Origin: Malacoraja senta
Taxonomy: Eukaryota
NCBI GenBank assembly: GCA_038087875.1
Contig: CM075980.1
Location: 15,128,001-15,192,000, forward strand
DNA length: 64,000 nt
Direction of reading: 5' to 3'
The position numbers and the translations under genes are program-made. Positions 15,257 to 60,945 of this stretch are shown in pieces. The notes beneath the pieces are model-generated. The model saw nothing but the letters and a program-made list of their open reading frames with translations, was not told the origin of the DNA and did no database searches. Each line of letters begins with the position of its first letter. Within the stretch, counting starts at the first letter, position 1.

Positions 15257-15257
<1 letters not shown>

Positions 15258-20700: not shown

Positions 20701-20756
20701 CATGTTTCATAGACAAACAATCTGATTGGCTATGTTTGATATTGAATTTTTTCCAG

Positions 20757-20830
20757 ACCACATCCCTGAGTAAAAAAATGATGCTGGAACAGCTTAATAT
20801 AATCAATGGAATTGTTCTCATGGAAACGAG
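20757..20830 (+). CDS. CLUH: CLUH-like coding exon (TTSLSKKMMLEQLNIINGIVLMET), copy 1
   Basis: Matches LEQLNVINGI. Confidence 0.9.
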
Positions 20831-22572: not shown

Positions 22573-22772
22573 NNNNNNNNNNNNNNNNNNNNNNNNNNNN
22601 NNNNNNNNNNNNNNNNNNNNNNNNNNNNNNNNNNNNNNNNNNNNNNNNNNNNNNNNNNNNNNNNNNNNNNNNNNNNNNNNNNNNNNNNNNNNNNNNNNNN
22701 NNNNNNNNNNNNNNNNNNNNNNNNNNNNNNNNNNNNNNNNNNNNNNNNNNNNNNNNNNNNNNNNNNNNNNNN
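22573..22772. other. Assembly gap (200 N)
   Basis: Run of N. Confidence 1.
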
Positions 22773-24061: not shown

Positions 24062-24141
24062 GCGATAAAGAACCAGCAAAAAGCTGTCATAATCAGCGAG
24101 CGAATCCTTGGCTTTGATCATCCAATACAATTCGTGAATAT
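24062..24141 (+). pseudogene. Duplicate copy of CLUH-like exon 14221..14301 with a 1-bp deletion (80 nt, frameshift)
   Basis: GATCATCCAAT here versus GATCATCCCAAT in copy 1; lies in the duplicated block. Confidence 0.8.
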
Positions 24142-25034: not shown

Positions 25035-25107
<73 letters not shown>

Positions 25108-25251
25108 AGTCCATCAGCTTTCTACTGATTCTCTCACCACCCACCTGTGTGGTGGCAATGCCTGGGTACCGATCAATGCCCAGCACCCAGGTAGCGATGC
25201 CCTGGGACGCGACTGTTCCGAGCACTGCATTATCCTGTTCTACCTCCACAG

Positions 25252-25377
25252 GTCAGGCTGGGTCTCTACTGCTTTGCCAACAATCAGAATGCAACAGCAC
25301 TGAGGCTGCTGTACCGTGCCCAGCAACTGATGCTGACTGTCTGTGGAGAGGACCACCCTGAAGTAGCTGTTCTTGAT
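25252..25377 (+). CDS. CLUH: Duplicate copy of CLUH-like exon 15402..15527
   Basis: Same sequence as copy 1, inside the duplicated block (likely assembly artefact). Confidence 0.6.
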
Positions 25378-26700: not shown

Positions 26701-26822
26701 ATTAACATCGGTCTTGTGCTCCAAGCTGCACTGGATTATGACCTTGCAATTCGATTTTTGCAGAAAGGTCTGGAATTAAACTCCAAATATTCTGGACCCC
26801 AGGCGCTACAGACTGCCCTTAG
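26701..26822 (+). CDS. CLUH: Duplicate copy of CLUH-like exon 16851..16972
   Basis: Same sequence as copy 1, inside the duplicated block. Confidence 0.6.
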
Positions 26823-29306: not shown

Positions 29307-29400
29307 TTATCATCTCCTGGCCCAAGTCAACGCCAGCAAGGCTGACTTCCGAGCAGCTATGCAGCACGAGAAGCAGGCCTACATCATCTACAGGGATCGG
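29307..29400 (+). CDS. CLUH: Duplicate copy of CLUH-like exon 19456..19549
   Basis: Same sequence as copy 1, inside the duplicated block. Confidence 0.6.
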
Positions 29401-29930
29401 GTTAGTTATTCCAAAATGTTTTCTCTGTGTTGTAGTCCGGTGGCATTTAAGTCAACCTCTGAAAGTTACCTTGGCCGATTGCACTCAGTGGAATATAAGG
29501 CGAGGGTGCACACTACATGTTGCTGAATCAACTCCAATTTTCTGTCACAGCAAGTAACGCATTCTGCAATAAGTGAAGATTTCCCACGTTACAAAGCAAC
29601 TTATGTTGTCAAATATGATGTTAAATAGGTGCCATCATCTATTCTTATTACTTGTATATACTACAGGATATGACTCAATTGTGTTTTTTTCTGTCCACAC
29701 TACCTTAACCCATTCTTTCACAGAGGGGCAGTTTGTGATGCAGACAGGAACACGTATTTTGACGTATACTGCATTTAATAGAAATAGACATTTGGTCCAA
29801 AATAAGTCCTCCCCTTTACATATCACCAGCATTCTGTACTGCCAATTGACAATCTTGGAAAACCCCAAAACACTGAATATTTGGAAATATGGCAAAATTA
29901 ATTCATTTGGATTTTTATTTTCAAAAATAG

Positions 29931-30065
29931 CTTGGGGAGACGCACCTTAAAACGAAAGGAAGTTCTGAGTTCCTGAAGCATTTTACTCAGCAGGCAGTTA
30001 ATCTCCAGAGAACCATGAATGAAATTTACAAGAATGGATCAAATGCTAATCTTTCTCCAGTACAG
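29931..30065 (+). CDS. CLUH: Duplicate copy of CLUH-like exon 20080..20214
   Basis: Same sequence as copy 1, inside the duplicated block. Confidence 0.6.
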
Positions 30066-30607
30066 GTTGGTGCCCCTTATTAACCTACCTTGCCTTTTGT
30101 TCCAGTGTAAAATTTCCTTGCCTGGATTAGAGGGTTTCAACTACAGGGAGAGGGATAGACTTGGATTGTTTCTCTGGAACATCAGAGGTTGAGGGGAGAC
30201 TTGATAGAGGTATATACAATTATGAAAAGCATAGGTATGATAGAAGTCAGAACCTTTTTTCCCCAGGGTGAAAATGTTCAGTACTAGATGGTATAGCTGT
30301 AAGGTGAGAGGGATGGTTTATGGAGCTGCGTGGGGCAAGTTATTTTACACGGATGGTGGTGGGGTCTGGAACACCTTGCCAGGGATGGTGGTGGAGGCAG
30401 ATATGATAGCTGCGTTTAAGAGACTTTTGGATAAGCACATGAAAGTGCAGGAACAGAAGGATATGGATCACATGCAGGTAGAAGAGATGTGTTTAGCTAT
30501 GTTCAGCACAAACATTGTGGGCCGAAGGGCCAGTCGTTTGCTATATTGTTCCATGTTTCATAGACAAACAATCTGATTGGCTATGTTTGATATTGAATTT
30601 TTTCCAG

Positions 30608-30681
30608 ACCACATCCCTGAGTAAAAAAATGATGCTGGAACAGCTTAATATAATCAATGGAATTGTTCTCATGGAAACGAG
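30608..30681 (+). CDS. CLUH: Duplicate copy of CLUH-like exon 20757..20830
   Basis: Same sequence as copy 1, inside the duplicated block. Confidence 0.6.
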
Positions 30682-32486
30682 GTAGGCCTGCCTTTCATTT
30701 CCTATCTTCCCCTTGAGACTATGGTGCAATCTAAATTAATATTGTTTAGGGTTGAGAACTAATATCAGCGCAGGAGTATTCAAACATCATCAATCAACAA
30801 CATGGCCAGAGCAATGAATAATTATATCAAGGAATGTAAATACTTGACCTTTCTAAGAAATGTATAATTTATGTCTAAATTGTGAGTGGTATTATGTCGT
30901 AAAAGCACTCGACTCCCTGATAATCCATCTGTCTAGAATGCTGCCAAACTGGATCCTACACAATTTTAAAAAGTCGATCGCAGTAAGGAAACGTTATAGT
31001 GCGTCGGATGGAACTGCAGATGCTGATTTACACCTTAGACACAAAATGCTGGAGTAACTCAGCAGGACAGGCAGCATCTCTAGATAGAATGGGTGATGTT
31101 TTGGGTCGAGACCAGACTGAGAGTCAGGAAGAGGGCACCACAGAGATAAGGAAGTGTAAGAGATCAAATGAGATGAAGAATAGATCATTGTTAGCTGGAA
31201 GATGACACAAAGCAGAGATAAAATGTAATCAAGGGGACAGTCAGACTGGTCAGAGAACTGGGAAGGGGGAGGGATGGAGAGAGAGGTAAAGCAAGGGTTA
31301 TTTGATGTTAGATAAGTCAATATTCATACCACTGGGGTGTAAGCTGCCCAAGCGAAATATGAGGTGCTGTTCCTCCAGTTTGCACTGGGCCTCACTCTGG
31401 CAATGGAGGCCCAGGACAGAAAGGTCAATGTGGGAAAGGGAAGGGGGTTTAACATTGAGCAACCGGGAAATCAGGTAGGTTTAGGCAAACTGAGTTGAGG
31501 TGTTCAGCGAAACGATCGGCGAGCCTGCGCTTGGTCTCGCTGATATACAGGAGTCCACACCTGGAACAGCGGATACAGTAGATGAGGTTGGAGGTCCGAA
31601 AGGTCAGTGTGCTGCATTTATGTCTCTGCTGTGCAGCAATGAAGATACTACTGATTGGTCTTTCATTTCTAAGCAAAGGGGGGGGGGGGGGGGTGTCACC
31701 ATGCCTTGCTCACAGTCACAGTTCTGTGAATCTTTTGGACATCTGGATTCATGACGTTGTGAGTGATCTTGTCTTCAGTTCTTTCATTGTCGGATATCCT
31801 GCCAACGTGCTTGAATAATGTTTTGTCTTTCAGTGAGTCAACTCAAGCTGAGTTGAAAAATAGCCATCGATGAGTAAAATATAGACTGGGAAAGCAATGA
31901 CAAAGGGGGCAAAGAGGGCGAGCAGTTTTATGTGTGCTCAGGAGATGGTTCTTGATGGGGGTGGGGGAAGGAATGTCTAGCAAACAGTGATCATTTCATA
32001 GGGCGTAAAATAGAAAAAGGGTACGGACCACACCAAGGCAAGAATAACCAATTGGAGAAGGCCCAGGTAAATTGGAAATGACGTTTGGTAGACTAAACTA
32101 ATTTTTAAAATGGGAGGAATTTAAAGTGAAGATGTTTTGCCCATTCTGTTAACGTTGCTCGTCCAGGAGGCAAATTAAACCATGGTGTTGGAAGAGGGTT
32201 GGATAAGATTCTGAAAGGAAATAATTTGTCGGGCTGCAGGGTAGGATGGATATTGCATTGAGCTGCATTGTTCCTATGTGAAAGACAAATAATTACCGTA
32301 CAAATCTGATGGTATGAACATTGAAATCTCCAATGTTAGATAACTAAGCTACAAACAACCCCTTTTCCCTCCTCCCACCATTTCCCATGTTCTTCAACGG
32401 CAATGATGAAGTGATTTTTTTTGGGGATTAAAATTTAAATGTTTCCACTACTTTCTTCAACTGATCAACTTTAATGTTTATTTTAG

Positions 32487-36764: not shown

Positions 36765-36931
36765 CTAATACATTTACAAAGGAAAAATCCATTCATGTTA
36801 CAGGATCAAGAATATACTAATTTGCTATTTAAATTATTGTACTATTATTACATGCATTCAAAGGCTACTTAAAAAACTAAATTTTCATTTTTGTCTGGCT
36901 TGAGCGAAATTGAAATCTGAGTGCCACTCGC

Positions 36932-37030
36932 CTCATTTTCTGTGATCACCACCATCCCACAGTCCTTCAGGAAACTCTTCTCCCATTCTGTAAACAACGG
37001 ATCAAAGAGAAGGCAGCTCACTCGAGGGAT
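36932..37030 (-). CDS. SRRD: SRRD exon 4 (IPRVSCLLFDPLFTEWEKSFLKDCGMVVITENE)
   Basis: DP+F motif of SRR1; the 3' boundary is a GC donor (GAG|GCGAGT). Confidence 0.9.
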
Positions 37031-37658
37031 CTGGTGGACACATGGAGGAAATATTGAGAACGTTATAGAAAGATTAACAACGATGTACCGCGGCCAGTTT
37101 AGTGCAGCACCCTGTTCTTGGTGATATCCATTGTCTGCACAGTGGTGATGGGCTGCTGCACTTTGATAATTACAGGGGTACGCATTCTGTTCCCCCAGTT
37201 CTCGGGGAACCTCCAGCTCAAGCCCTCTTTCTTCTGTGCAACGGAGATCGGAGGGAGAGGCACACACCTACACAACTGCTGCCAACTGTAAATGCTTTCA
37301 TCATAAACCCACGTGTAAAACAAAAGATGAGCTGATATTCCCATCTAGTATTTCAGGATCAGAAGCTGGATTCCAAACAAAACTACCACTGAACTCTCCC
37401 AAAGAGAAGTTCTTGGTTTGATGTCTTTCCCCTGCATCTTGAAAAGTAGCTCTGATTTGGGCACATGAGTTAACATGTACATCACCCCAATGACTTGCAC
37501 ATTTTTTTAAAGCACAATATTGTAAGTTCTTTTCATAACTTTATCCATAGACATATATTGTTCTAAATGTAGCCATCCGTCAGTGACTAGTTTCCACACA
37601 AATACTGGGCAACAGATTTACTTGTCTTGCTCCACCTTTGGCATCTTGCTATCCTTAC

Positions 37659-37885
37659 CTGTAGAGTCTCGAGCAGCAGAAAGAGCAGGGCCAACTGATA
37701 GCGAGATGCAACCGAATCGGTAAAGTTTCCAATCCCGTAACATACTACGTCGAGTGTAGTTTGACAAAGATCTATATCATCCTTCTGATCCTCCGGGACT
37801 TTGGCACCTCCAACATCCAGCGAGCGACTTGACGCTGGTGTCTTTGAAGTGGTGTGATATTTGTTTACCGCTCTCTGGACTGTTT
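37659..37885 (-). CDS. SRRD: SRRD exon 3 (ETVQRAVNKY...VVCYGIGNFTDSVASRYQLALLFLLLETLQ)
   Basis: SRR1 motif VCYG+G.F...+R.QL. Confidence 0.94.
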
Positions 37886-37961
37886 CTGAAATCAAGTGCG
37901 ACAGTCACCATGATGGAAGCATGGTTAAATTATCAAAAACATCGATAGTCTTACAACTCAC

Positions 37962-38451: not shown

Positions 38452-38573
38452 AAAGTTCAGCATCACCTCCCTGCTATTGTATTTATTGCCCTGCCCTGGC
38501 AGAATCCTACAGCCTTCATAACCACTTTATCCACCTCCACCCCCAACTTTCTGAGGATCATTGGACTTGTAAC

Positions 38574-38601
38574 CAAAGATCATAGAGCTCTATGATCTTT
38601 G
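38574..38601. mobile_element. 28-bp perfect palindrome with an 8-bp TSD (CTTGTAAC); putative TIR-only micro-transposon
   Basis: CAAAGATCATAGAG|CTCTATGATCTTTG; direct repeats at 38566-38573 and 38602-38609. Confidence 0.75.
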
Positions 38602-39054
38602 CTTGTAACTAAGGTACCTCTGTTCCCACCCCTAACTTCCTACCACTTGTGGGGTATGTCCTAGCCCCAGTCCCAAAATAAATCACCTCACATCCACCAG
38701 GATTAAATTCCATCTGACATTGCCAAGGCTATTTCACCAACACATGGCATTTCCTCCATAACTTTTGCGTTTTGTTTTTAAATGCCAAGGCTTGCTTTGC
38801 TTCCAGAGCCCTGTGGAGGAGGGTGTTGAAGCACGATGGGCTTTACAGAGCCTCACTAGTCTGCAGGTTGCCCTTTGCTGCTGCAGTGTGTGGGTCTGGA
38901 TGCCCCGCACTGAGTGATGTGTCTGCACTCGGGCCCTCCCCTCCCTCCTGTCGGTACCGGACAGGGGCTCCCTCCCGAGATACGCCCTGGCCCGGCTCCA
39001 ACCCTCCTTCTCATCTCCCCGGTCCCGGCCCTGGCCCTGGCCTGACTGACTTAC

Positions 39055-39194
39055 ACCGTCTCCCGCAGCCTGTGCCGGACACTGTCCCCCTCACACACGC
39101 TCGGCCGTTCGGCCGTCCGCCCACCGGCCTCTCTCCGCTTCGCCCTCTGCCTGCCGACCGTTTGCCAGCCTCCGTGGGCCGGGCCGGCCGCCAT
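39055..39194 (-). CDS. SRRD: SRRD exon 1 (MAAGPAHGGWQTVGRQRAKRRE...HRLRET)
   Basis: Strong Kozak context GGGATGG, W..V..R motif typical of SRR1 N-termini, GTAAGT donor; total CDS 891 nt = 296 aa. Confidence 0.88.
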
Positions 39195-39334
39195 CCCGGG
39201 CTCGCCTCCCAGTGGCCGAGTGTCCCCGGGTAACGCTCCCCTCGCAATCCCACCCCCATCCCCACCTTGCGGGCGGAACCTTCAGTCGCGTTCCTTGTTT
39301 CCGCCGGTGGCAGCGGCGCGCCGGGCCCTAACAA

Positions 39335-39517
39335 GATGGCGGGCGGGGTGTAGGGAGCGGGCGGCGGGGAGACAGCGAGACTCGGTCAGGAGGGGAGCGA
39401 CAGCGAGCACCGGCCCATCATTACTCCCCTCACCCTCTGTTCCCGCGTTGCCTCAGGTGTTGTTCACACACTGACACCGTTGATCATCTATCGGGCTCAG
39501 AACCCGCACCAACGCCG
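39335..39517 (+). other. TFIP11: TFIP11 non-coding (5' UTR) exon 1; start approximate
   Basis: Consensus donor CCG|GTGAGT at 39517/39518; pairs with the acceptor CCTCAG|GC at 41918, 5 nt before the ATG. Confidence 0.7.
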
Positions 39518-39585
39518 GTGAGTGCGGCTGTTCCCGGGCCCCGCGATCCCGGCCCCTCGCCGAGCCATCTCCAGTCCCCGTCCCC

Positions 39586-41893
39586 ACGCCGTCCCGGTAC
39601 CCCGCCGCCCCGGTACCCCACCGTCCCGGTACCCCACCGTCCCGGTACCCCGCCGTCCCGGTACCCCGCCGCCCCGGTACCCCGCCGCCCCGGTACCCCG
39701 CCGCCCCGGTACCCCGCCGCCCCGTTACCCCACCGTCCCGGTACCCCGCCGCCCCGATACCCCGCCGTCCCGGTACCCCGGTACCCCACCGTCCCGGTAC
39801 CCCGCCGCCCCGATACCCCGCCGTCCCGGTACCCCGCCGTCCCGGTACCCCACCGTCCCGGTACCCCGCCGCCCCGGTACCCCGGTACCCCGCCGTCCCG
39901 GTACCCCACCGTCCCGGTACCCCGCCGCCCCGATACCCCGCCGTCCCGGTACCCCGCCGTCCCGGTACCCCACCGTCCCGGTACCCCGCCGCCCCGATAC
40001 CCCGCCGTCCCGGTACCCCGCCGTCCCGGTACCCCGCCGCCCCGATACCCCGCCGTCCCGGTACCCCGCCGTCCCGGTACCCCGCCGCCCCGGTACCCCG
40101 CCGCCCCGGTACCCCGCCGTCCCGGTACCCCGGTACCCCGCCGTCCCGGTACCCCGCCGTCCCGGTACCCCGCCGCCCCGGTACCCCGCCGTCCCGGTAC
40201 CCCGGTACCCCGCCGTCCCGGTACCCCGCCGCCCCGGTACCCCACCGTCCCGGTACCCCGCCGCCCCGATACCCCGCCGTCCCGGTACCCCGCCGTCCCG
40301 GTACCCCGCCGTCCCGGTACCCCGCCGCCCCGGTACCCCGGTACCCCGCCGTCCCGGTACCCCGCCGCCCCGGTACCCCGCCGCCCCGGTACCCCGCCGC
40401 CCCGGTACCCCGCCGCCCCGGTACCCCGCCGTCCCGGTACCCCGCCGCCCCGATACCCCGCCGTCCCGGTACCCCGCCGTCCCGGTACCCCGCCGCCCCG
40501 GTACCCCGGTACCCCGCCGTCCCGGTACCCCGCCGCCCCGATACCCCGCCGCCCCGTTACCCCACCGTCCCGATACCCCGCCGTCCCGGTACCCCGCCGT
40601 CCCGGTACCCCGCTGCCCCGGTACCCCGGTACCCCGCCGCCCCGGTACCCCGCCGCCCCGATACCCCGCCGCCCCGTTACCCCACCGTCCCGGCACCCCG
40701 CCGCCCCGGTACCCCGGTACCCCGGTACCCCACCGTCCCGGTACCCCGCCGCCCCGATACCCCGCCGTCCCGGTACCCCGCCGTCCCGGTACCCCACCGT
40801 CCCGGTACCCCGCCGCCCCGGTACCCCGGTACCCCGCCGTCCCGGTACCCCACCGTCCCGGTACCCCGCCGCCCCGATACCCCGCCGTCCCGGTACCCCG
40901 CCGTCCCGGTACCCCACCGTCCCGGTACCCCGCCGCCCCGATACCCCGCCGTCCCGGTACCCCGCCGTCCCGGTACCCCGCCGCCCCGATACCCCGCCGT
41001 CCCGGTACCCCGCCGTCCCGGTACCCCGCCGCCCCGGTACCCCCGCCGCCCCGGTACCCCGCCGTCCCGGTACCCCGGTACCCCGCCGTCCCGGTACCCC
41101 GCCGTCCCGGTACCCCGCCGCCCCGGTACCCCGCCGTCCCGGTACCCCGGTACCCCGCCGTCCCGGTACCCCGCCGCCCCGGTACCCCACCGTCCCGGTA
41201 CCCCGCCGCCCCGATACCCCGCCGTCCCGGTACCCCGCCGTCCCGGTACCCCGCCGTCCCGGTACCCCGCCGCCCCGGTACCCCGGTACCCCGCCGTCCC
41301 GGTACCCCGCCGCCCCGGTACCCCGCCGCCCCGGTACCCCGCCGCCCCGGTACCCCGCCGCCCCGGTACCCCGCCGTCCCGGTACCCCGCCGCCCCGATA
41401 CCCCGCCGTCCCGGTACCCCGCCGTCCCGGTACCCCGCCGCCCCGGTACCCCGGTACCCCGCCGTCCCGGTACCCCGCCGCCCCGATACCCCGCCGCCCC
41501 GTTACCCCACCGTCCCGATACCCCGCCGTCCCGGTACCCCGCCGTCCCGGTACCCCGCTGCCCCGGTACCCCGGTACCCCGCCGCCCCGGTACCCCGCCG
41601 CCCCGATACCCCGCCGCCCCGTTACCCCACCGTCCCGGCACCCCGCCGCCCCGGTACCCCGGTACCCCGGTACCCCGCCGTCCCGGTACCCCGCCGCCCC
41701 GATACCCCGGTACCCCGCCGTCCCGGTACCCCGCCGCCCCGGTACCCCGCCGCCCCGATACGCCGCCGTCCCAGTACCCCGCCGCCCCGGTACCCCGGTG
41801 TCCCGCCGCCCCGTTACCCCAATACCCCGCCGTCCCGGTACCCCGCCGAGCCGTCCCCTCCGCCCCCTCACCCCGCCGAGCCGTCCCCTCCGC
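39586..41893. repeat. GC-rich minisatellite, 16-bp unit GYCCCGGTACCCCGCC with 8-bp half units, roughly 140 units
   Basis: Directly visible tandem array filling TFIP11 intron 1; source of the 725-1051 aa low-complexity ORFs. Confidence 0.97.
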
Positions 41894-41923
41894 TCTGTTC
41901 ACCGAATCTCACCCTCAGGCACG

Positions 41924-42123
41924 ATGTCGATGGCACATCTGTACGGGAAGGACGGCACCGACGATGAGGTGGAGATGGAACGATTTGAGATCTCGGACTG
42001 GGACCTGGAAAATGAGTTCAATCCGGACCGTGTCCGCCACCGGCAGACAAAGGAAGATGCGATCTACGGCATGTGGGCCGAGAACGACTCTGACGACGAG
42101 AGACCCAGTTTTGGGGGGAAACG
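41924..42123 (+). CDS. TFIP11: TFIP11 first coding exon ([11 protein letters not shown]...[18 protein letters not shown]...RPSFGGK)
   Basis: TIP_N domain motif FEI.DWDL.NEFNP.R...QTKE.A.YG+WAE. Confidence 0.96.
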
Positions 42124-42359
42124 GTAATTTTGTGATTCATGACGTTTACCTCTCAGCACCTGGCTTGCTTTTCCTCCATAACCTTTTGCTCCTATGGAAG
42201 CTGAATCTGGATGTTGAGCAAAACACACAGTGCTGGATGAACTCACATCGGGATGGACAGGCGATGTTTCGGGGCAGGGACCCACCATTTCTTGATTTTG
42301 TTGTATGGATACATGCCTGCTGGCAGCTTGGCATCCCATTCGATGACCACTGGTCAACA

Positions 42360-42790
42360 TTTAGAACAGTACAGCATAAAACAGGCCCCTTGGCCCACAA
42401 TACCTGTGCCGAACATGGTACCATGACCATTGCTTATAGATCTGCTAGTAACCCATATCCCACCATTCCCTGCATATCCATATGCTTATCCAAAAATCCC
42501 TTAAATGCCACTATCATATCTGCTTCAACCACCACCCACCACAACTTGTTCCAGGCACTCGCTGCCCCATGTGTAAACAAAACTTGCCTCACACATTTTT
42601 CTTTAAACTTTACCTCTCTCACCTTAAAATTAAGCCCTCTAGTATTTGATTTTTCCAACCTGGGAAATAGGTTCTGACTGTTTACCTTATATATATGCCT
42701 TATCATAATTTTATATACTTCTACAATCTCCAGTGTTCCAGAGAAAACAAGCCAAGTTTATCCAACCTCTCCTTGTAACTAATAGCCTGT
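42360..42790 (-). mobile_element. CR1-type LINE 3' fragment
   Basis: NLFPRLEKSNTRGLNFKVR...WN.L...VVEADMIVAFKGFLDKHM. Confidence 0.8.
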
Positions 42791-43190: not shown

Positions 43191-45441
43191 AATAGACAAT
43201 AGGTGCAGGTGGAGGCCATACAGCCCTTCAAGCCAGCACCGCCATTCAATGTGATCATGGCTGATCATCCACAATCAGTACCCCATTCCTGCCTTCTCCC
43301 CATATCCCCTGACTCCGCTATCTTCAAGAGCCCTATCTAGCTCACCGTTGAAAGTTTCCAGAGAACAGTCCTCCACCGGCCGCTGAGGCAGAGAATTTCA
43401 CAGACTCACAACTCTCTGTGTGAAAAAGTGTTTCCTCATCTCTGTTCTAAATGGCTTACCCCTTATTCTTAAACTGTGGCCCCTGGTTCTGGACTCCCCC
43501 AACTTCGGGATCATGTTTCCTGCCTCTAGCGTGTACAAACCCTTAATAATCTTATATGTTTCAATAAAATACCCTCTCATCCTTCTAAATTCCAGAGTAT
43601 ACATGCCCAGCCGCTCCATTCTCTCAGCATATGACAGTCCCACCATCCTGGGAATTAATCTTGTGAACCTACGCTGCACTCCCTCAATAGCAAGAATGTC
43701 CTTCCTCAAATTTGGAGACCAAAACTGCACACAATACTCCAGGTGTGGTCTCACTAGGGCCCTGTCCAACTGCAGAAGGACCTCTTTGCTCCTTTTCTCA
43801 ACTCCTCTTGTTATGAAGGCCAACATGCCATTCGCTTTCTTCACTGCCTGCTGTACCTGCATGCTTACTTTCAGTGACTGATGAACAAGGACCTCCAGAT
43901 CCCGTTTTACTTCCCCTTTTCCCAACTTGACATAATTTAGATAATAATCTTCCTTCCTGTTTTTGCTACCAAAGTGGATAACCTCACATTTATCTACATT
44001 TAACTGCATCTGCCATGCATCTACGCACTCATCCAACCTGTCCAAGTCACCCTGCATTCTCATAGCATCCTCCTCACAGTTCACACTGCCACCCAGCTTT
44101 GTGTCATCTGCAAATTTGCTAATGTTACTTGTAATCCCTTCATCGAAATCATTAATATATATTGTAAATAGCTGCGGTCCCAGCACCGAGCCTTGCGGTA
44201 CCCCACTAGTCACTGCCTGCCATTCTGAAAGGGACCTGTTAATCCCTACTCCTTGTTTCCTGTCTGCCAACCAATTTTCTATCTATATCAGCACTCTACC
44301 CCCAATACCATGTGCCTTAATTTTGCCCACTAATCACCTATGTGGGACCTTATCAAATGCTTTCTGAAAGTCCAGGTACACTACATCCACTGGCTCTCCC
44401 ATGTCCATTTTCCTAGTTACATCCTCAAAAAATTCCAGAAGATTAGTCAAGCATGATTTCCCCTTCGTAAATCCATGCTGACTCGGATCGATCCTGTTAC
44501 TGCAATCCAAATGTGCCGCTATTTCATCTTTTATGATTGACTCCAGCATCTTCCCCACCACCGACGTCAGGCTAACTGGTCTATAATTCCCTGTTTTCTC
44601 TCTCCCCCCTTTCTTAAAAAGTGGGATAACATTAGCTACCCTCCAATCCACAGGAACTGATCCTGAATCTATAGAACATTGGAAAATGATGACCAATACG
44701 CCCACGATTTCTAGAGCCAATTCCTGAAATATCCTGGGATGCAGACCATCAGGCCCTGGGGATTTATCAGCCTTCAGTCCCATCAGTCTACCCCAACACC
44801 ATTTCCTGCCTAATATGGATTTCCTTCAGTTCTTCCGTCACCCCAGATCCTCTGGCTAGTACATCAGGAAGATTGTTTGTGACCTCCTTAGTGAAGACAG
44901 ATCCAAAATACCTGTTCAACTCATCTGCCATTTCCTTGTTCCCCATAATAAATTCACCCTTCTTCAAGGGTCCAACTTTGGTCTTTACATTTTTTTCCCT
45001 TCACATACCTAAAGAAGCTTTTACTATCCTTCTTTATATTCTTGGCTAGCTTACGTTTGTACCTCATCTTTTCTCCCTGTATTGCCTTTTTAGTTATCTT
45101 CTGTTGCTCTTTAAACGTTACCAAATCCTCTGGCTTCCCGCTCATCTTTGCTATGTTGTTCTTCTTCTCTTCTATTTTTATACTGTCCCTGACTTCCCTT
45201 GTCAGCCACGGTCGCCCCGTACTCCCCTTGGAATCTTTCTTCCTCTTTGGAATGAACTGATCCTGCATCCTTCTGTATTATTCCCAGAAATATTTGCAAT
45301 TGTTGTTCCACTGTCATTCCTGCTAGGGTATCTTTCCAGTCAACTTTGGCCAGCTCCATCCTCATGGCTCCATAGTCCCCTTTGTTCAACTGAAATACCG
45401 ACATCTTCGATTTACCCTTCTCCCTCTCAAATTGTAGATTA
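43191..45441 (-). mobile_element. CR1-clade LINE, 5'-truncated, disrupted reverse-transcriptase ORF2
   Basis: KSPGPDG, NYRPVSLTS, YLDFQKAFDKVPH, GVPQGSVLGP, KFADDTK and VRPHLEYC motifs spread over 4 broken ORFs. Confidence 0.93.
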
Positions 45442-45702
45442 TAAAGAGTCCAGAGAGGAAACTAATAATTTCGCTGGTCAATAATCATACGAAACACCTG
45501 CAATTACACCTCTGCTCATTAGTCAAAAGTACAGTAGCTTTAATCATTGGGAGAAAGGCAGAACTTGTGTGGAACCTTCAGGTTTGTGTGTATTTGATGC
45601 TCCCCTCTGTCCCCACTTCCAGCAGTCACTCAACAGTACGTTGACGTTAACAATTGCGGTTAGCTTGTAATGGCTCTGATTTGAAATTTGTGCTCGTCAT
45701 AG

Positions 45703-45862
45703 CTCCAAAGATTACACAGCTCCGGTGAACTTCATCAGCGCTGGACTCCGTCGAACAACAGATGAGGAAAATGAAAAAGAGAAGGATTCCGATGAATCTG
45801 ATGAAGAGAAGGTTAAAAGAGAAGAATTTCAAAAAGAGTTTGCGCCACAGAAATTGAAAACT
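45703..45862 (+). CDS. TFIP11: TFIP11 coding exon 2 ([15 protein letters not shown]...PQKLKT)
   Basis: [11 protein letters not shown] motif; canonical sites. Confidence 0.95.
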
Positions 45863-46217
45863 GTAAGTGTTTGCCAGTGCTGGGGTGTTGTGTGTGGATG
45901 GGTTCTGGTCCATGTTGAAGCATATGGTCCATACCAAGGTGCTGCCACTCTATGACGAGACTTGTATTTACATAACACCTTTCATGGCTTCAGGAGAAAC
46001 CAGAGCATTGTAGAAACAAGGAACTGCAGATGCTGGTTTATATCAAAGATAGACACAAAGTGCTGGAGTAACTCAGCGGATAGGCAGCATCTCTGGGGAG
46101 AAAGAATGGGTAACAACCAGACCAGTTAAGTAGATTTTGAAGAGTCTTTTGAAGAATCTACAGTTACACCTTTGTAAAGTGGCAGTAAAGCTTCATGCAG
46201 AAAGCTGGATAAACTGT

Positions 46218-46919
46218 GTAGGAAAGAACTGCAGATGCTGGTTTAAATCAAAGGTAGACACAAAATGCTGGAGTAACTCAGCGGGACAGGCAGCATCTCT
46301 GGAGAGAAGGAATGGGTGACGTTTTGGGCAAAACCCTTCAGACTGATGTCAGGGGAGTGGGCGGGACAGAGATAGAATGTAGTCAGAGACAGTAACACTG
46401 GTGGGAGAGCTGGGAAAGGGAAGGGGATGGAGAGAAAGGGAAAGCAAGGGCTATTTGAAGTTGGAGAAGTCAATGTTCATACCGTTGGGGTGTAAGCTAC
46501 CCAAGCGAAATATGAGGTGCTGTTCCTCAAATTTGCGCTGGGCCTCACTCTGACAATGGAGGAGGCCCAGGACAGAAAGGTTAGATTGGTAATGGGAGCG
46601 GGAGTTAAAGTGCTGAGCAACCGGGAGATCAGGTAGGTTAAGGCAGACTGAGCGGATGTGTTCAGCGAAACGATCACCGAGCCTGCGCTTGGTGTCGCCG
46701 ATGTACAGAATTTGACACCCGGAACAGCGGATACAATAGATGAGGTTGGAGGAGGTGCAAGTGAACCTCTGCCTCACCTGAAAAGACTCTGGGTCCTTGG
46801 ATGGAGTGGAGGGGGGAGGTAAAGGGACGGGTGTTGCATCTCCTGCGGTTGCAGGGGAAAGTACCTGGGGAGTGGGTGGTTTAGGTGGGAAGGGACGAGT
46901 TGACCAGGGAGTTGCGGAG
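46218..46919 (-). mobile_element. Penelope-like element 3' fragment with an intact GIY-YIG ORF piece and an 11-bp TSD
   Basis: ORF 46451..46777 reads NLIYCIRC..C.ILYIGDTKRRL..RF.EH...GMN; GGATAAACTGT at 46207-46217 and 46920-46930. Confidence 0.9.
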
Positions 46920-47386
46920 GGATAAACTGTTAGTTGAATGACAAAATGCTCTGTTTGAGGCTTTGTTTTGAGGTGAAAGGAGGCATGGACATGGAACTGG
47001 CTGAGAAATCAGCACCAGAATAGTGGCAAACACTTGTCACCAAGCTGAGGGCAAATTTAAACGTTACCTAGGGATTGATGGAGGACTATCCCTCGTAATT
47101 AACAATCATTAACAAATTAATAGTATAAGCTAACAATTTCAAACTCTGTGGATAACACTTAGATAGTGAACGACATTGGTCCCTCAGGGATTGTTTACTT
47201 CCTTCCAGCCAGTTCTTAATCCAACATGATGTTATCTTTATTACTGAAGGATTTAGTTTGTAAAGGAGTCTTTGTGTTATATTTTACCAAAAGGATTTTA
47301 GAATTCTAAGCCAGTTGTTGCTACCAGGTTTGTATCTGCACAATCTTCATTACTCCGTCCACCAAATAATGATTCTGTATCCACAG

Positions 47387-51145: not shown

Positions 51146-51649
51146 GTTATAGACATGACGGGAAAGGAACAGAAAGTGTATTACAGTTACAGCCAGATAA
51201 CCCAGAAGCACGACATTCCTGACGATATGCAGTCACTGAGCAAAGATGCCAAGTCAGAGGGGTTCTCCCTTCCAGAGCTGGAGCACAACCTGGAGCTGCT
51301 GATCGAGATGACGGAGCAGGAAATCATCCAGAATGATCGCCAGCTGCAGTATGAGAAGGACATGGTAATCAACATCTCCCACGAGAACGAGAAGCTCTCT
51401 GAGATCCTAGAGCACGAGGGGAAGATCATAGACAAGCTCAGCAATATCCTGCAGATCGTGGAGGATTGCGAGAAGAGACTGCAGCCCAACTGCGAAAACC
51501 CATTGACATTGGAAGAATGTGCAGACATTTTTGAAATGTTGCAGGAGAAATATTTTGAAGAGTATAAGATTTTTGACCTGGCGGAACTTTCCATTGCCGT
51601 TGTATTTCCACTGCTGAGAGAATACTTTAAGGCCTGGAATCCTTTGCAG
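51146..51649 (+). CDS. TFIP11: TFIP11 coding exon 6 ([18 protein letters not shown]...LPELEHNL...WNPLQ)
   Basis: VIDMTG and PEL.HNL motifs. Confidence 0.96.
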
Positions 51650-52080
51650 GTACAGACTAACAGCATAGAATTGAATGACCTTGGTGCATTTAATGGTGGT
51701 GGGTCATGCAAACTGGGACAGAGTGCAGGTTTGATGTCCCCTGTGCCTCTAGGCTTCTCAATTCTGATAGCTGACTCCTGTTGGATGGTAACTGGCAAAT
51801 TCCATCAACACTGATTTTCTTGAAGACTTGCTAAAGTAATGCATTAAAAGTTAATGACAATAACTGGGGTCAGGTGCGGTTCCAGCAGAGAAGTGTTGGG
51901 TTATGTAGTATACCGGGCAAACACAGTCCCAAACTGTTTGTCACTGAGCCCAGACTTTGCATGTCCATTTTTTTAATACAGTAACTGTGGACTAACGATG
52001 GAAGAGTCAGTTCATCCCTAACCAATTTGGCATAAAATGGGCATAAAAAAATGAGGTAACAGTTTTGTCCCTTCATTTAG

Positions 52081-52187: not shown

Positions 52188-53574
52188 GTAAAAATAAAAT
52201 AATTGGTAGAAACTTCTGTATTTTGGAACACATTTGCATCCCGACTCTCAAGCAGACATCGCGCATACCTCATTTCAGCTTGTTTCATCAGTATGAAGAG
52301 ATGTCCCGACTTGAAACATCACCTGTCCATTTCCTCCACATATGCTGCCTGACCGGCTGAGTTCCCCCAGCACTTTGTGTTTTTCTCAAGATTCCCACAT
52401 CAGCAGTCTCTCGTATCTCCTCATTTCAACTATTTTCAGGCTTTAATTCATTGAGGTCCGAGTTCCAAGGAGCACTGTTCCTCAAATATATGTAGATCAG
52501 AGCATCCTGTGTTTGGTTCACTACGCTGTGCTGAATACAGCTGAGCAGAAGGAAAATCAAAGCTTTGGTGTTTTTCTTCCTAGGACATTGCAAAAGCTGA
52601 GCAACGGACATTTCTCTCAACACTTTTAACATATGTTCACATCAAAGTGGAGCTTCCATCAGCAGGCCCAGTCTTATAAACAGAATCTGTGCCATTTGCT
52701 GTGGAGTAGAGTTACAGAATTACCATATTCCCATCTCGGAAAGGTGGTGAATAGCTTGCATCTGACTTTAAAATAAATTTTAAATCCAATTGATTGATTG
52801 GCGAGATACTTTAAAATGAGAGAGGCAGATCAAGATGCTCATAGTTTAACTTACAATGACTTACATATGTTATGTTTATAAATGAGACAACCTGAAATTC
52901 TTGTAGATCTTATTGGCTGCATTCCTGATTAATGAAACATAACACCGTGAAACTCCTCTTACTGCTTGTGGCATTGACAGTGCAAAGGAGAAAGTTTAAA
53001 AATACCAGAAGACCAGCATTTCGACTTGGTGACTAGGAAATCAACTGAGGAATACAGAGTGAACCCCTGCTTCCACAGTCACATCTTATTCTGTCAATTA
53101 TTTTTTACTATATGTAGCCCAGATCTTCTTGGATCAAAACTTCCTTGATGCTGGAAGTGTTTAAAATGTAATGAGTTAGTCTGTAAGTTCATGGGCAGGC
53201 CAGCAATTTTAAGTGCACATTCCAATGATAACTGATGCTTTGATTGTCATACCATTTGTCTCTGGAACCAAATCTCTGGAGTTGATCAAAGAGCAACTCG
53301 CATTGTATGGACAGCTGTGCTTCCAGCTTTGTTTTAAAACATGATCACTTGAGCTTTGCTTCCACCATACACTGACTTGTTTTAACATTGTTTTCCTATT
53401 TCCCATATTTGACACAGAGTATGAGTGAACAAAAGAAAGAGCCGGGAAGGAACGAGCTGAAAATATGTTAATATTGGGAACCTGATAATGAATAGTTCCA
53501 GTTTGTTGGAAAATGAGGGACTAAATGAACTTTTCTTACTTCTTACTGGCCTTTCTACCTCCTCAAATGCACAG

Positions 53575-53743
53575 GTTAATGTGGGAGGTGTGGATGCCGT
53601 CCGCACGTAACATTGTGTCCCAGTGGCTGCCCAGGAATTGTGATCCCATGGTTGATTTCTTGGAGAACTGGATGCCTGTGGTCCCTCTTTGGATATTGGA
53701 CAATATTCTTGAACAATTGGTTTTTCCTAAACTACAGCGTGAG
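53575..53743 (+). CDS. TFIP11: TFIP11 coding exon 8 ([29 protein letters not shown]...FPKLQRE)
   Basis: GCFC domain match. Confidence 0.95.
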
Positions 53744-54356
53744 GTTAGAACCTTTTCCTGTTATTATAGGTCTGGTAGTTTTCAATCTGCTAAATTCTGC
53801 TTCATTGATAATGTTTAATTATTAGAAAACACTTGTACAATTTAGAACTTTTTCATTGAGTTTATCAACATATAGATTAATAACTACATGAAGAGATATA
53901 AACTAAAAAATGAGATACAAAGACACACCATTCGGTGTAACAAAGACCATGTTGCTAATCAGGTGAATGTAAAGAAAATGAGCAGGCAAAGAAAATACTG
54001 ATACATCAAAACTGAGGGAATGGAAATTAAATGGGAATAATAGAAAGGGTTTGTGCCGGAGGGAATAAAAGAGACATGGGATTGGAAGATTCAAAACAAA
54101 ACAGTTCTGCAAAAAAGGAAAAGTTCAAAAATGGGGGTCCTGATTCACAGATCAAAGGATGCAGCCTTGTTTACAGGGATTGATCAGCACCATGGTATGA
54201 GATGGAACTAATATGAACAGAGGAGGGACAGAGCTTTATGAAATCAGTTGTGCTGCACGCTATTTGATAAACAACAGTTGAGAAATGAGAAACACAAGAA
54301 CATAATTAACCACAGCCTATTGCGCTCATCTACACAATCTTTGGCATTCTTTTTAG

Positions 54357-56782: not shown

Positions 56783-58059
56783 GTAAGAGATTCTTCATTT
56801 TATCTTATCTGGGACTCTTCCAAAAGGTGGGAGATGTATCAGGGCTCTCGCTTAACTTTTTTTCCCTGTTGCCAGCCGGGCAACCTTGGTAGCTTTTTAG
56901 GTTGCCAACTGACAGTTTAGGCGGTCATTTAAGATGGCTTGCATGATGTGTGCGATAATGTGCTCGGACGAAGTGCGTAGTTACCAGTCGGAATTATACT
57001 CAATGAAGCATTCACATATTATTTCTGCTTCAAATAAAGTCACAAACTAAACATATTCACCAATCAAGACATGATATATCCCACAATGACATGCAGCAAA
57101 ATTATAAGACAGTATCTCAACTCTTTTTACACATTGCAATTGATGCAATTTCTATTAGTTCTTTCCACTTCCAAACAACAATGTGGTTGGATTATTCAGC
57201 ATATGATCAACCTGTGTCAATAAATCCTGGACCATGGTAACATATATGCTTAACCATGCACACTACAGATTGATTGATGCAAGCATGTTTTCTTTGAAGG
57301 ACCGAAAATTACCATAACATGGCCATAGCATGGGTCGTTATTGCTATTGGTACAGAAACACTCTCGCTTCCCACATAATTTATCCACAACAAAATATACA
57401 GGTTGCAAGGACATTTCTACAGGCATTTTATGATAATAGCTGTTAAAACCAACTATACCCATCTGACAGGTTAAACATTACACTAGCTGACAAGAGATGG
57501 CCAAAGGACATAACTGCAGCAAATGTTCTTTTGGTAATATGTTTAAAGGTGTCAAGACGCCACATTACCGGACATTCAGATTAAATGTACGTGTTGTGAA
57601 CAGCAATGAAGATACCCAGTTTGTAAGCATCAGATTTAAAAAAAATTATTGATAAACGCTGTTTTCATCATTCCCACTTCAGAATTATCATTAAAATTTC
57701 AACTGAAATATCTCCTGACCAAATTTGTGATGTATATGATTGACTGTAGAAGTAAAACCTGGATAAATCCTACGTATAGTTGTGGATGTTGCTCATTAAA
57801 TAACTACAGTACTGATACTCCATATTAAGAGCATTGATTTACTGTTAAAATGAATTCTGTAATAACGTGTCAACGGCAGTAGTGACAATCGAACACTGCG
57901 GTTTTAATGTTTCACGTGTTCACAATTTAATTAATCGATCTTTATGGATTAAAACAAATAATAACATTGGGAATTAAAACACATTTGATTGCATTCCGTT
58001 ATCAAACATAGTCAATGTTCGCTCTGAAGACATTTCCAGCACAATAGGGTCAGGCAGGG

Positions 58060-58900
58060 GGGTGTATGTGAATCAGTGCGGGGTGGATAGATGGCGGGTG
58101 TGGGGGGGGGGGGGGGGGTTAGAAGGCAGTCGGTGCAGAATGGATGGATTGAGGCAGGTGAATTAGTACATGTTGGTTGGAGTAGGTAAAATTGTGAGGG
58201 GAGAGCACGGGGGATGTCAGTGGTGTTGAATGGGGCGGTTCAGTACAGGATGGATGGGGATAGACAAAAGTGCTGGAGAAACTCAGCGGGTGAGGCAGCA
58301 TCTATGGAGCGAATGAAATAGGCAAAATTTCGGGTCGAGACCCTTCTTCAGACTGTTCCCCCCCCCCATTCTTGAATGGGAGGATCAGTACAGGATGGAT
58401 TGGGGGGGAGATCAGCGCAGGATGAATGGGGGGGGGGGGTCAGTACAGTGTGGATCGGAGGGTCTGTGCAGGATGAATGGGGGATCACTACAGGATGAAT
58501 GAGGGGAAGGGGGAAGGTGCAGGGTAAATGGAGGTGGGTTAGTACGGGATGAATGCTGGATTAGTACAGGATGGATGGGGGATCAGTACAGGATGGATGG
58601 AGGAGAAGTGCAGGATGGATGGGAAAGAGGTAAGTACAGGGTGAATTGGGGAACCAGTGGAGGATGGATGGGGGGGTGGCAGGAGAATCAATGAGAGGTG
58701 GATAGGGTGATCAGCGCAGGATGAATAGATGGGGGGGGGGGGTTGATGGGGAGGGGAGCACAGGGGATGTCAGTGAGGACTGAATAGAGGGCGGAATGGG
58801 GATCAGTGCGGGATGGAGTGGAGGGGTCCCAGGATAAGGGGGGGGGGTGGAGGGGGCGTACAAGAGAGGGAGAGAGGGAGAGAGAGAGAGAGGGAGCGAG
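58060..58900. repeat. Degenerate purine-rich tandem repeat (GATCAGTACAGGATGGATGGGG-like) with G runs
   Basis: Direct reading; lies inside the hAT-like element. Confidence 0.75.
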
Positions 58901-59039
58901 GTGGGGAGGAAGGAAGGTCAGCGCTCCTCGGACAACATCGCCTCGGTTGACAACAGCTGCCTTGGCCGTTGGGATTTCCTCGCCACCGCCTCCCTCCTCC
59001 GCCAGCCAACAGCAAGGTGCAGGGCCGAGCGGTGCAGCT

Positions 59040-59067
59040 CAGAGATCCTCTAGCTATAGGATCTTCG
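59040..59067. mobile_element. Second 28-bp near-palindrome with an 8-bp TSD (GTGCAGCT)
   Basis: CAGAGATCCTCTAGCTATAGGATCTTCG; direct repeats at 59032-59039 and 59068-59075. Confidence 0.7.
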
Positions 59068-59081
59068 GTGCAGCTGCTTCA

Positions 59082-59341
59082 GAAGGGTCGGAGCGAATGA
59101 CGGGCCCCGAATAGCGGCAGCAGCGGCCGCGAGAGCGGCTCCATCTCCTCACCCTCCCTGATAGCTGCCGCTGCTTCTTTCAAAACAAACCCTCCCGCAC
59201 GCCGAGGCCTCCCCATCCCTCCCTCCCTCGTCCCGGCCTCGGCGTGCGGGAGGGTTTGTTTTGAAACAAGCAGTGGCCGCTATCAGGGAGGAGGAGGAGA
59301 TGGAGCCGCTGTTCGGGTCCCGTCATTCGCTCCGACCCTTC
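59082..59341. repeat. Long inverted repeat (hairpin), arms of ~110-130 bp, 25-nt loop
   Basis: Perfect 32-bp core stem 59178-59209 / 59235-59266. Confidence 0.9.
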
Positions 59342-60589
59342 CTCACCCCGCACCTAGTATCTTTGCCCCGCAACACAGCCGTCGCCGACACGAAACGTCG
59401 CGTTCCTTTTCTCCAGAGATGCTGCCTGACCCGCGGAGTTACTCCAGTTTTTTGTGCCTATCTTCGGTACAAACCAGTATCTGGTTGCCAAGCCGGTCAA
59501 AATGACTCGGCGTTTTGGTTGCCCGGCGGCGCTTTGAGTGGTCAGGGGCACCCGGGCAACCGCTAATTTCGAGCCCTGTGTATGTATATGGAAAGGGAAG
59601 GAGAAGGAATGAAATTTAGAGAGGAATCTGAAAGGCAAATGCAGCAAAGAGTTGAAAGGAAAATAAGTTTTTTTTTAAGCAGAAATTGTGAATGTTTTGG
59701 AATCCTTTGAATGCAAAATATCTAAAGTCTGAACCTCGGGACCTCCCAATAAGTTTGAGTTAATGAAGTCATTAAAAAGTGTGGTTAATACTAGAAGCAC
59801 TTGCCAAGGTTTGTGCAAATGGGAAAATAGATCCCTTATTTGCTTTGAACAGCATTAATGCAGGCTTCAAAGGGCGTTGAGTAATTGAAAATTGGTTCAC
59901 ACTTGCCGGGCTTGGACTCTGATTATGCGGAGGGGAGGTTTCATTTTAATTGGGAGCTTCTTACAAAACTGGTCCAACCATATCCTGTCGCCAAAGATCG
60001 AGTGCTCCCAAACCCATTACCCTTTCAACACCACTTTACGTTAATCCTGTGCAAAGCCCTGCTCTCCTCCTGCTGTACTGGACACCTGCCACAAACCCCT
60101 GCTTTGCCCCGCCTGCTGCTGCAGCTGCTCCCTGAGAACCAGCCAGCTCCAAGCACGGGCATCGCTGGAAATTGGCAACATGCACTCATCCCCTGAGCAC
60201 CCGATCTCATGGTCTCTCTGATAACCTACCAGATATGATGGAGCCAGCTGTCCCTACCTTTCTTTGGGTGCACAGTCCTCCCAGCCCAGAGATCATGATA
60301 ACAGCTCTGGCCAAGGACCACAGTTGTGAACAACAGTTTAATAAGATTACCAATGAATTATTATATATTTAAATATATTATTATGAAATAAGATGATCAA
60401 ATCTTGGTTACCAGTTGCTACCACCTATTCCCCATTGACTTGGTGCCTCAAGTTGTAGGGTATCAACTGTACAGTGTTTTTCAGCTATCACCTCCTAACT
60501 CGGCGTTTGACTGTAAAGTGCACTTAATCCAAATGCCATTTATTGCCTGTAGAATGCAGACTTTCCTTCATTGTTTTGCCTTTAAACAG

Positions 60590-60945
60590 GTGGCTACATG
60601 CAGCCAGGAGCTCGAGAAAACATTGCCTACCTGACCCACACGGAACGCCGGAGGGACTTCCAGTACGAGGCCATGCAGGAGCGGCGTGAGGCTGAGAACA
60701 TGGCTCACCGCGGCATCGGAGTCACATCAACCTCCATCCCCATGAACTTCAAGGACCTGATCCAGGCCAAGGCTGAAGAGCACAACATTGTCTTCATGCC
60801 TTTGATGGGCAAACGTCATGAGGGGAAACAGCTCTACACCTTTGGGCGGATCATCATCTACATTGACAGAGGGGTTGTGTTTGTACAGGGAGAGAAGACT
60901 TGGGTGCCAACGTCACTTCAGAGCCTCATTGATATGGCTAAGTAA
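60590..60945 (+). CDS. TFIP11: TFIP11 last coding exon ([14 protein letters not shown]...[14 protein letters not shown])
   Basis: C-terminus matches TFIP11; summed CDS 2493 nt = 830 aa. Confidence 0.97.

What the first reader, a model, noticed from the sequence alone, without database searches (positions are those of the whole stretch)
59032..59075. Second 28-bp micro-palindrome with its own 8-bp TSD and symmetric compensatory changes
The structure is GTGCAGCT-[CAGAGATCCTCTAGCTATAGGATCTTCG]-GTGCAGCT. It has the same length and central AGCT as the 38574 element and 21/28 identity. Positions 9/20 (A:T to C:G) and 12/17 (G:C to T:A) change in mirrored pairs, preserving the palindrome. Two independent insertions of identical size within 21 kb argue for an abundant family with subtypes rather than chance.
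Basis: seen in the sequence. Interest (0 to 1): 0.72.

Follow-up and report, generated by a model that had tools for sequence, protein, structure and literature searches.

The report
Transposon excision scar, second copy
A 28-base near-palindrome between two copies of an 8-base target duplication, in an intron of the TFIP11 gene, is most likely the scar left when a cut-and-paste transposon jumped out and the cell rejoined the two stubs; it is probably not a tiny transposon that moves by itself.

Summary
GTGCAGCT (59032-59039), a 28-bp near-palindrome (59040-59067) and GTGCAGCT again (59068-75) are there. The 28-mer is 21/28 identical to the perfect palindrome at 38574-38601, which has its own 8-bp duplication. 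Chance expectation is about 1e-7.

The 28 bp read as 12 nt of a left transposon end, a shared AGCT, and 12 nt of a right end. This is the architecture of the commonest repair junctions after Drosophila P-element excision (14+AT+14 and 15+TA+15 between intact 8-bp duplications, PMC2895639). There, 17-nt 3' tails anneal at a self-complementary microhomology. AGCT at positions 13-16 of both end variants explains why both scars measure 28 bp, so equal size does not show a mobile family. The mirrored differences reflect two parent subfamilies, each with matching ends.

Best reading: a P-type excision scar (0.58). Rivals are a deletion derivative from abortive gap repair of an 8-bp-duplication transposon such as hAT (0.22) and a truly mobile micro-element (0.07).

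The parent element, an empty site and the superfamily could not be tested.

The scan has already reported similar scars elsewhere in this genome, including the sister at 38566-38609. Those notes call the genome a skate; I did not verify that.

The parts
59032..59039 (+). left copy of the 8-bp target site duplication, GTGCAGCT
   Evidence: exact 8/8 match to 59068-59075
59040..59051 (+). left arm: first 12 nt of the left transposon end (CAGAGATCCTCT)
   Evidence: 9/12 identical to the left arm of the sister element at 38574
59052..59055 (.). central self-complementary AGCT, read as the microhomology where the two retained ends annealed (positions 13-16 of each end)
   Evidence: the same centre in both elements; analogous to the AT and TA microhomologies in Drosophila junctions
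59056..59067 (-). right arm: first 12 nt of the right transposon end, read on the minus strand (CGAAGATCCTAT)
   Evidence: differs from the left arm at positions 2, 3 and 11
59068..59075 (+). right copy of the 8-bp target site duplication, GTGCAGCT
38566..38609 (.). sister scar: CTTGTAAC, a perfect 28-bp palindrome (12 + AGCT + 12) and CTTGTAAC

Best explanation
This is an excision scar of a cut-and-paste DNA transposon that makes 8-bp target duplications and cuts its ends with a long stagger, as the P element does. Inferred steps: (1) an element whose ends began CAGAGATCCTCTAGCT (left) and C[A/G]AAGATCCTATAGCT (right) inserted at GTGCAGCT in the last intron of TFIP11 and duplicated those 8 bp. 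(2) On excision the transposase cut the transferred strand at the element tip and the other strand about 16-17 nt inside. Each flank therefore kept its target duplication plus a 3' single-stranded tail carrying the first 16-17 nt of the element. (3) The two tails have the same sequence and are not complementary, but they can pair at the self-complementary AGCT at positions 13-16. Gap filling of 12 nt on each side and ligation give duplication + 12 + AGCT + 12 + duplication. Shown directly: the architecture, the exact duplication, that the insert is foreign to the site (it is not an inverted copy of the flanks), and its relatedness to the sister element. Inferred: the stagger, the joining route and the P-type identity of the parent.
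For: The architecture is exact. Each retained end is 16 nt counting AGCT, within the 17-nt limit of P-type tails. Sequenced Drosophila P excision junctions have the same form. The commonest are 8-bp duplication + 14 nt + (AT) + 14 nt + duplication (14 isolates) and 15 + (TA) + 15 (5 isolates); both are perfect palindromes between intact duplications (PMC2895639 Table 1). The 17-nt stagger and 8-bp duplication are P-element hallmarks (PMC7776569 and PMC10983969). Characterised hAT, Mutator and Transib enzymes instead form hairpins on the flanking DNA and leave no transposon end behind (PMC5499845). Both scars use the same AGCT although their arms differ, which fits deterministic microhomology joining of tails of fixed length. 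The three arm mismatches are allowed because each arm is copied from its own tail. The insert shares 21/28 with the sister while the flanks are unrelated, so it is not templated from local DNA. The scar lies in a CpG-island-like patch, and the sister lies about 200 bp from the island between the divergent SRRD and TFIP11 genes. This weakly fits the P-element preference for promoters and open chromatin.
Against: No parent element with these ends was seen, and no THAP or P transposase domain was found among the scanned ORF segments of the window. The superfamily therefore rests on scar shape alone. The start CA(A/G)AG and the 8-bp duplication also fit hAT (TIR consensus YARNG, from my own knowledge). 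The sister's duplication CTTGTAAC fits the hAT target pattern nTnnnnAn. A long stagger has not been demonstrated for any vertebrate P-like transposase; the zebrafish study reports mostly flanking deletions. No empty or filled orthologous site could be examined. With only two scars, the length ceiling of 2 x 17 nt cannot be tested here.
Confidence: 0.58

Rival explanations
1. This is an extreme internal-deletion derivative made by abortive gap repair. After excision of an element that makes 8-bp duplications (hAT or any other such superfamily), the break was repaired from the sister chromatid. Synthesis stopped after about 16 nt at each end, and the nascent strands annealed at AGCT. The result is an immobile miniature of the element, not a direct joining of transposase-made tails.
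For: It gives the same final architecture. Synthesis-dependent repair followed by end joining is the usual fate of P{wa} breaks in wild-type flies. Microhomology-mediated miniaturisation is documented for a Tc1/mariner element (PMC3814204, listed). The CA(A/G)AG termini with an 8-bp duplication, and the nTnnnnAn-type duplication of the sister, fit hAT (and my own knowledge).
Against: Repair synthesis tracts vary widely. Two independent events from different subfamilies both stopping within the first 16 nt on both sides is unexpected unless tail length is fixed by the enzyme. No intermediate-size derivative with these ends is in the window.
Confidence: 0.22
2. This is a truly mobile micro-element. 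The 28-bp palindromes are themselves the transposing unit, an abundant family with subtypes mobilised in trans. The mirrored changes are kept because both ends must be recognised.
For: There are two copies of identical length, with exact duplications and a conserved core, within 21 kb. The mirrored changes are non-random.
Against: Twenty-eight bp leave no room for subterminal transposase-binding sites. Both Drosophila P (internal THAP sites and 11-bp sub-repeats) and hAT elements (subterminal BED sites within ends of about 450 bp) depend on such sites. Ends 28 bp apart cannot be brought together by bending duplex DNA (general knowledge). Identical length is already explained by the AGCT microhomology. 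The two copies are only 75% identical, and this one has asymmetric arms. Earlier notes of this scan (leads only) list remnants of this kind with many different lengths (12-46 bp).
Confidence: 0.07
3. This is chance, a sequencing or assembly artefact, or hairpin-opening (P-nucleotide) palindromes templated from the flanks.
For: None specific. Short palindromes flanked by repeats do arise by chance at low stringency.
Against: The joint chance is about 1e-7. The arms are not inverted copies of the adjacent flank. The two sites share the insert but not the flanks. I noticed no resemblance to common sequencing adaptors (by eye).
Confidence: 0.02

Closest known systems
Drosophila melanogaster P-element excision footprints (end joining of the 17-nt 3' tails; PMC2895639, PMC7776569)
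   Same: Both copies of an intact 8-bp target duplication flank 12-16 nt of each transposon end in inverted orientation, joined at a short self-complementary microhomology. The product is a 28-32-bp palindrome, and the same junction recurs in independent events.
   Different: Here the scar is a fixed, natural one in a vertebrate genome, not an experimental product. The microhomology is 4 nt (AGCT) instead of 2 nt. The end sequences are unrelated to the fly P element beyond the initial CA. The parent element and its transposase are unidentified.
Vertebrate P-like elements (zebrafish Pdre2 / zfTHAP9; PMC10983969)
   Same: 8-bp target duplications, short terminal inverted repeats starting with CA, and a vertebrate host.
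   Different: The Pdre2 ends (13 bp, starting CATACC) are unrelated in sequence. No retained-end footprints are described in the passages of that study I read, which mention deletions of flanking donor DNA and small deletions at one end.
hAT superfamily elements and their MITEs (Hermes, hobo, Ac/Ds)
   Same: 8-bp target duplication. Ends start CAGAG or CAAAG, like the hAT consensus. The sister's duplication fits nTnnnnAn.
   Different: hAT excision seals the flanking DNA into hairpins and removes the whole element, so its footprints alter the duplication and do not keep 12-16 nt of each end. Known hAT MITEs are several-fold longer and keep subterminal binding sites.
MITE birth by microhomology-mediated miniaturisation (PMC3814204)
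   Same: An internal deletion joined at a microhomology leaves the two ends and the target duplication.
   Different: Those products are MITE-sized (much longer than 28 bp), still mobile and amplified. Here only 12-16 nt per end remain.

Membership tests
P-superfamily excision footprint | target site duplication of 8 bp (7-9), both copies retained | tested here: met
   GTGCAGCT at 59032-59039 and 59068-59075, 8/8
P-superfamily excision footprint | no more than 17 nt of each transposon end retained, in inverted orientation | tested here: met
   12 nt per arm plus the shared AGCT gives 16 nt per end; the limit is taken
P-superfamily excision footprint | junction at a short self-complementary microhomology, or a blunt join or small filler, within the tails | tested here: met
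   Central AGCT in both scars; Drosophila junctions use AT or TA
P-superfamily excision footprint | parent element with the same termini that encodes a THAP plus P-type transposase | not testable with these tools
   None among the scanned segments of the window (Pfam on 118 stop-free segments; end searches).
P-superfamily excision footprint | an empty or filled site at the orthologous or allelic position | not testable with these tools
The metagenome scan found 0 hits. The ORF across the site has no relatives.
hAT superfamily remnant | 8-bp duplication with target pattern nTnnnnAn | tested here: inconclusive
   GTGCAGCT has T2 but C7. The sister CTTGTAAC fits fully. Pattern taken.
hAT superfamily remnant | termini of the form (T/C)A(A/G)NG | tested here: inconclusive
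   The left end CAGAG fits; the right end CGAAG does not at position 2. The consensus is from my own knowledge, not from a tool.
hAT superfamily remnant | excision footprint made by flanking-DNA hairpins, with no transposon end left | tested here: not met
   12-16 nt of both ends are retained and the duplications are unaltered; hAT chemistry
MITE (mobile non-autonomous element) | terminal repeats plus the internal or subterminal sequence needed for transposase binding | tested here: not met
   28 bp in total with a 4-bp interior; binding-site requirements of P and Hermes ends
MITE (mobile non-autonomous element) | many near-identical copies at unrelated loci that share internal sequence | tested here: inconclusive
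   Two copies in 64 kb, 75% identical; a genome-wide count was not possible

The most novel reading that the evidence does not exclude
The 28-bp palindromes are themselves mobile and would be the smallest cut-and-paste units known. They might be handled as hairpin or cruciform DNA, with subtypes whose two ends co-vary because one transposase must recognise both. A more moderate novel reading (probability about 0.55) is that these scars are a natural fossil record showing that a cartilaginous-fish P-like transposase cuts with the same stagger of about 16-17 nt as the fly enzyme.
Probability: 0.07. Interest if true: 0.85.

Novelty: new member of a known kind. Interest (0 to 1): 0.4.

Why it matters
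If the P-type reading is right, scars like this one record, base by base, where a vertebrate P-like transposase cut its ends. That geometry is established biochemically only for the Drosophila enzyme; the zebrafish THAP9 passages I read do not resolve it. A genome-wide catalogue of such scars would give the cleavage stagger, the favoured repair microhomologies, the target preferences (here a CpG-island-like patch and a promoter region between two divergent genes) and the history of germline excision, all without an active element. This single locus adds a second end variant. It shows that scar length follows from the AGCT microhomology, which is a useful rule for telling scars from true micro-elements. 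On its own it is a small, ordinary relic in an intron with no evident effect on TFIP11.

Tried and rejected

(3) A metagenome scan with a degenerate 28-mer covering both variants found 0 hits. This was expected, since that collection is unlikely to hold this animal's DNA.

(4) The 102-aa ORF spanning the scar was used as a handle to find allelic or orthologous ORFs with or without the 12-codon insert. No relatives were found.

(5) Parent element in the window. Searches with the 14-nt ends at up to 3 mismatches gave only chance-level or exonic hits, such as 51399 and 51420 inside a TFIP11 exon. A scan for inverted ends plus an 8-bp duplication over 40-8000 bp found only pairs of a dispersed repeat. 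Pfam on 118 stop-free segments found no THAP, P, BED or hAT domains.

(6) The predicted alternative 12-bp scar, joined at the inner GATC, is absent from the window.

(7) A paralogous empty site in another copy of the 'host element' is not available: 58920-59345 is unique in the window.

(8) A literature search for terminal-motif consensus strings found nothing useful.

(9) Earlier scan notes searched by sequence returned nothing.

(10) Rejected ideas: an RNA-type compensatory structure (there is no evidence of function, and the DNA hairpin energy is modest, -4.8 kcal/mol); P-nucleotide palindromes (the arms are not copies of the flanks); an adaptor or assembly artefact.

Full report
**Observation.** The sequence is as described. 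GTGCAGCT lies at 59032-59039 and again at 59068-59075. Between them is a 28-bp insert at 59040-59067, made of a 12-nt arm, a central AGCT (59052-59055) and a second 12-nt arm. The sister object at 38566-38609 has the duplication CTTGTAAC around a perfect 28-bp palindrome with the same AGCT centre.

The two 28-mers differ at positions 3, 9, 11, 12, 17, 20 and 27, which gives 21/28 identity. Only 11 of 14 mirror pairs are complementary; pairs 2/27, 3/26 and 11/18 are broken. The left end reads CAGAG...CT and the right end, read inward, CGAAG...AT.

**More than chance.**
- A scan for exact 8-bp direct repeats around a palindromic spacer finds only these two objects outside a GC-rich minisatellite. 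Shuffles give 0.06 per window for spacers of 40 bp or less.
- Allowing one mismatch in the duplication adds only chance-level 10-11-bp items.
- The core motif AGATC-N4-AGCT-N4-GATCT occurs only at the two sites.
- The joint chance of 21/28 identity to the sister plus an exact 8-bp duplication is about 1e-7.
- Two or more mirrored complementary pairs among seven random substitutions have P of about 0.017, so the symmetry of the differences is real.

**What it is made of.** The arms are not inverted copies of the adjacent flanks. The two loci share the insert but not the flanks. The 28 bp are therefore foreign DNA that arrived with an 8-bp target duplication, that is, the two tips of a cut-and-paste transposon with almost nothing between them. 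Counting the shared AGCT, each end contributes 16 nt.

**Mechanism.** My first guess was an internal-deletion derivative of a hAT-like element. Earlier notes of this scan on the same genome, including one on the sister element, proposed P-element-type excision scars. I treated that as a lead and tested it against published junction data.
- In Drosophila, P transposase leaves 17-nt non-complementary 3' tails on the donor flanks.
- The commonest end-joined products are 8-bp duplication + 14 nt + (AT) + 14 nt + duplication (14 isolates) and 15 + (TA) + 15 (5 isolates). These are perfect 30- and 32-bp palindromes between intact duplications, joined at a self-complementary microhomology near the tail tips (PMC2895639 Table 1).
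- The stagger and the 8-bp duplication are also described in PMC7776569 and PMC10983969.

The object here has exactly that form, with AGCT as the microhomology: 12 + 4 + 12 = 28. Both end variants carry AGCT at positions 13-16, so both scars must come out at 28 bp. Equal size is therefore predicted by the repair rule and is not evidence for a transposing 28-bp family.

Each arm is filled in from its own tail, so the arms may differ wherever the parent's two ends differed or where later mutation hit. The three mismatches against none in the 16 duplication bases are not significant; by my own calculation P is about 0.2. The mirrored differences from the sister are what two parent subfamilies, each with matching ends, would give.

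**Why P-type and not hAT, and how firm that is.** Characterised hAT, Mutator and Transib enzymes seal the flanking DNA into hairpins and remove the whole element, so their footprints do not keep 12-16 nt of each end (PMC5499845). The P element is the only characterised eukaryotic system I know of with such a long stagger.

The assignment still rests on shape alone. The start CA(A/G)AG with an 8-bp duplication also fits hAT (consensus from my own knowledge). The sister's duplication CTTGTAAC fits the hAT target pattern nTnnnnAn, while GTGCAGCT fits only at position 2 (pattern from PMC10368747).

A deletion derivative made by abortive gap repair of any element that makes 8-bp duplications would look the same. 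What speaks against that is that two independent events both kept 16 nt or fewer on both sides.

A truly mobile 28-mer is unlikely. There is no room for subterminal binding sites, which both P and Hermes ends use, and ends 28 bp apart cannot be synapsed by bending duplex DNA.

**Context.** TFIP11 runs on the plus strand. Its G-patch exon is near 47.45 kb, and GCFC-domain exons lie at 51146-51811 and 53525-53815. Its last exon is at 60586-60942, where the reading frame ends in a TFIP11-type C-terminus. The scar therefore sits in the last intron.

It lies inside a 900-bp CpG-island-like patch (58801-59700, GC 0.58, CpG observed/expected 0.78). It is 6 bp to the left of a 260-bp fold-back (59082-59341, arms 93-95% complementary) that has no other copy in the window and no target duplication.

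The sister scar lies about 200 bp from the large CpG island (38801-42400) between SRRD and TFIP11, which are transcribed in opposite directions. The SRRD exons are on the minus strand at 36872-37267 and 37590-37904. This is weakly in line with the P-element preference for promoters and open chromatin. With two sites the association is only suggestive; my rough estimate is P about 0.02.

**What could not be done.**
- The metagenome scan, the ORF handle and the search of earlier notes by sequence gave nothing.
- The window holds no element with these ends and no THAP, P, BED or hAT domain among the 118 stop-free segments of 84 aa or more that were scanned.
- The predicted alternative 12-bp scar, joined at the inner GATC, is not in the window.

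**Verdict.** The structure is real and transposon-derived.
- P-type excision scar: 0.58.
- Abortive-gap-repair deletion derivative, hAT or other: 0.22.
- Mobile micro-element: 0.07.
- Chance, artefact or flank-templated palindrome: 0.02.
- Something else: the remainder.

This is another member of a class the scan has already reported several times in this genome. The earlier notes call it a skate genome; I did not verify the organism. What this locus adds is a second end variant and the rule that scar length follows from the AGCT microhomology. Novelty: a new member of a known kind. Interest is moderate (0.4).

Noticed in passing
window 59082-59341: A 260-bp fold-back starts 6 bp to the right of the scar. 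Its arms (59082-59209 and 59235-59341) are 93-95% complementary, with about 21 extra nt in the left arm and a 25-nt loop. It is CpG-rich, has no target duplication and has no other copy in the window. Its origin is unknown: an inverted duplication or a fold-back element.
   Followed up: partly
window 58030-58850: A G-rich array of degenerate 22-28-bp units (of the type GGATCAGTACAGGATGGATGGGG) is followed by an (AGAGAGGG)n stretch at 58863-58901, just upstream of the scar. A copy of the dispersed short repeat is embedded at about 58259-58360.
   Followed up: partly
window 39574-41848: A very GC-rich minisatellite has about 149 copies of a 16-bp unit (GTCCCGGTACCCCGCC) with a 120-bp higher-order period. 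It lies inside the 3.6-kb CpG island between SRRD and TFIP11, which are transcribed in opposite directions.
   Followed up: partly
window about 12900-22570 and 22780-32400: There are two near-identical direct copies of a block of about 9.8 kb (offset about 9840-9850 bp), separated by the 200-N gap at 22573-22772. This is either a tandem segmental duplication or an assembly duplication around a gap.
   Followed up: no
window 43401-47008 (minus strand): Retroelement remnant with reverse-transcriptase hits at 43401-44282 and 44337-44825 and a weak, below-cutoff GIY-YIG hit at 46454-47008. If one element, it is Penelope-like, and it sits between the CpG island and the TFIP11 G-patch exon.
   Followed up: partly
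window 59387-59488 and at least 15 other places (e.g. 1103-1190, 7500-7598, 13594-13674, 46232-46324): A dispersed short repeat of about 80-100 bp (78-89% identity) occurs on both strands. Earlier notes link it to hammerhead-bearing Penelope derivatives, but no Rfam family reached its gathering score anywhere in the window.
   Followed up: partly
window 38566-38609: The sister scar sits in the 5' region of SRRD, about 200 bp from the promoter CpG island shared with TFIP11. Its duplication CTTGTAAC fits the hAT-type target pattern nTnnnnAn, which keeps the superfamily question open.
   Followed up: partly
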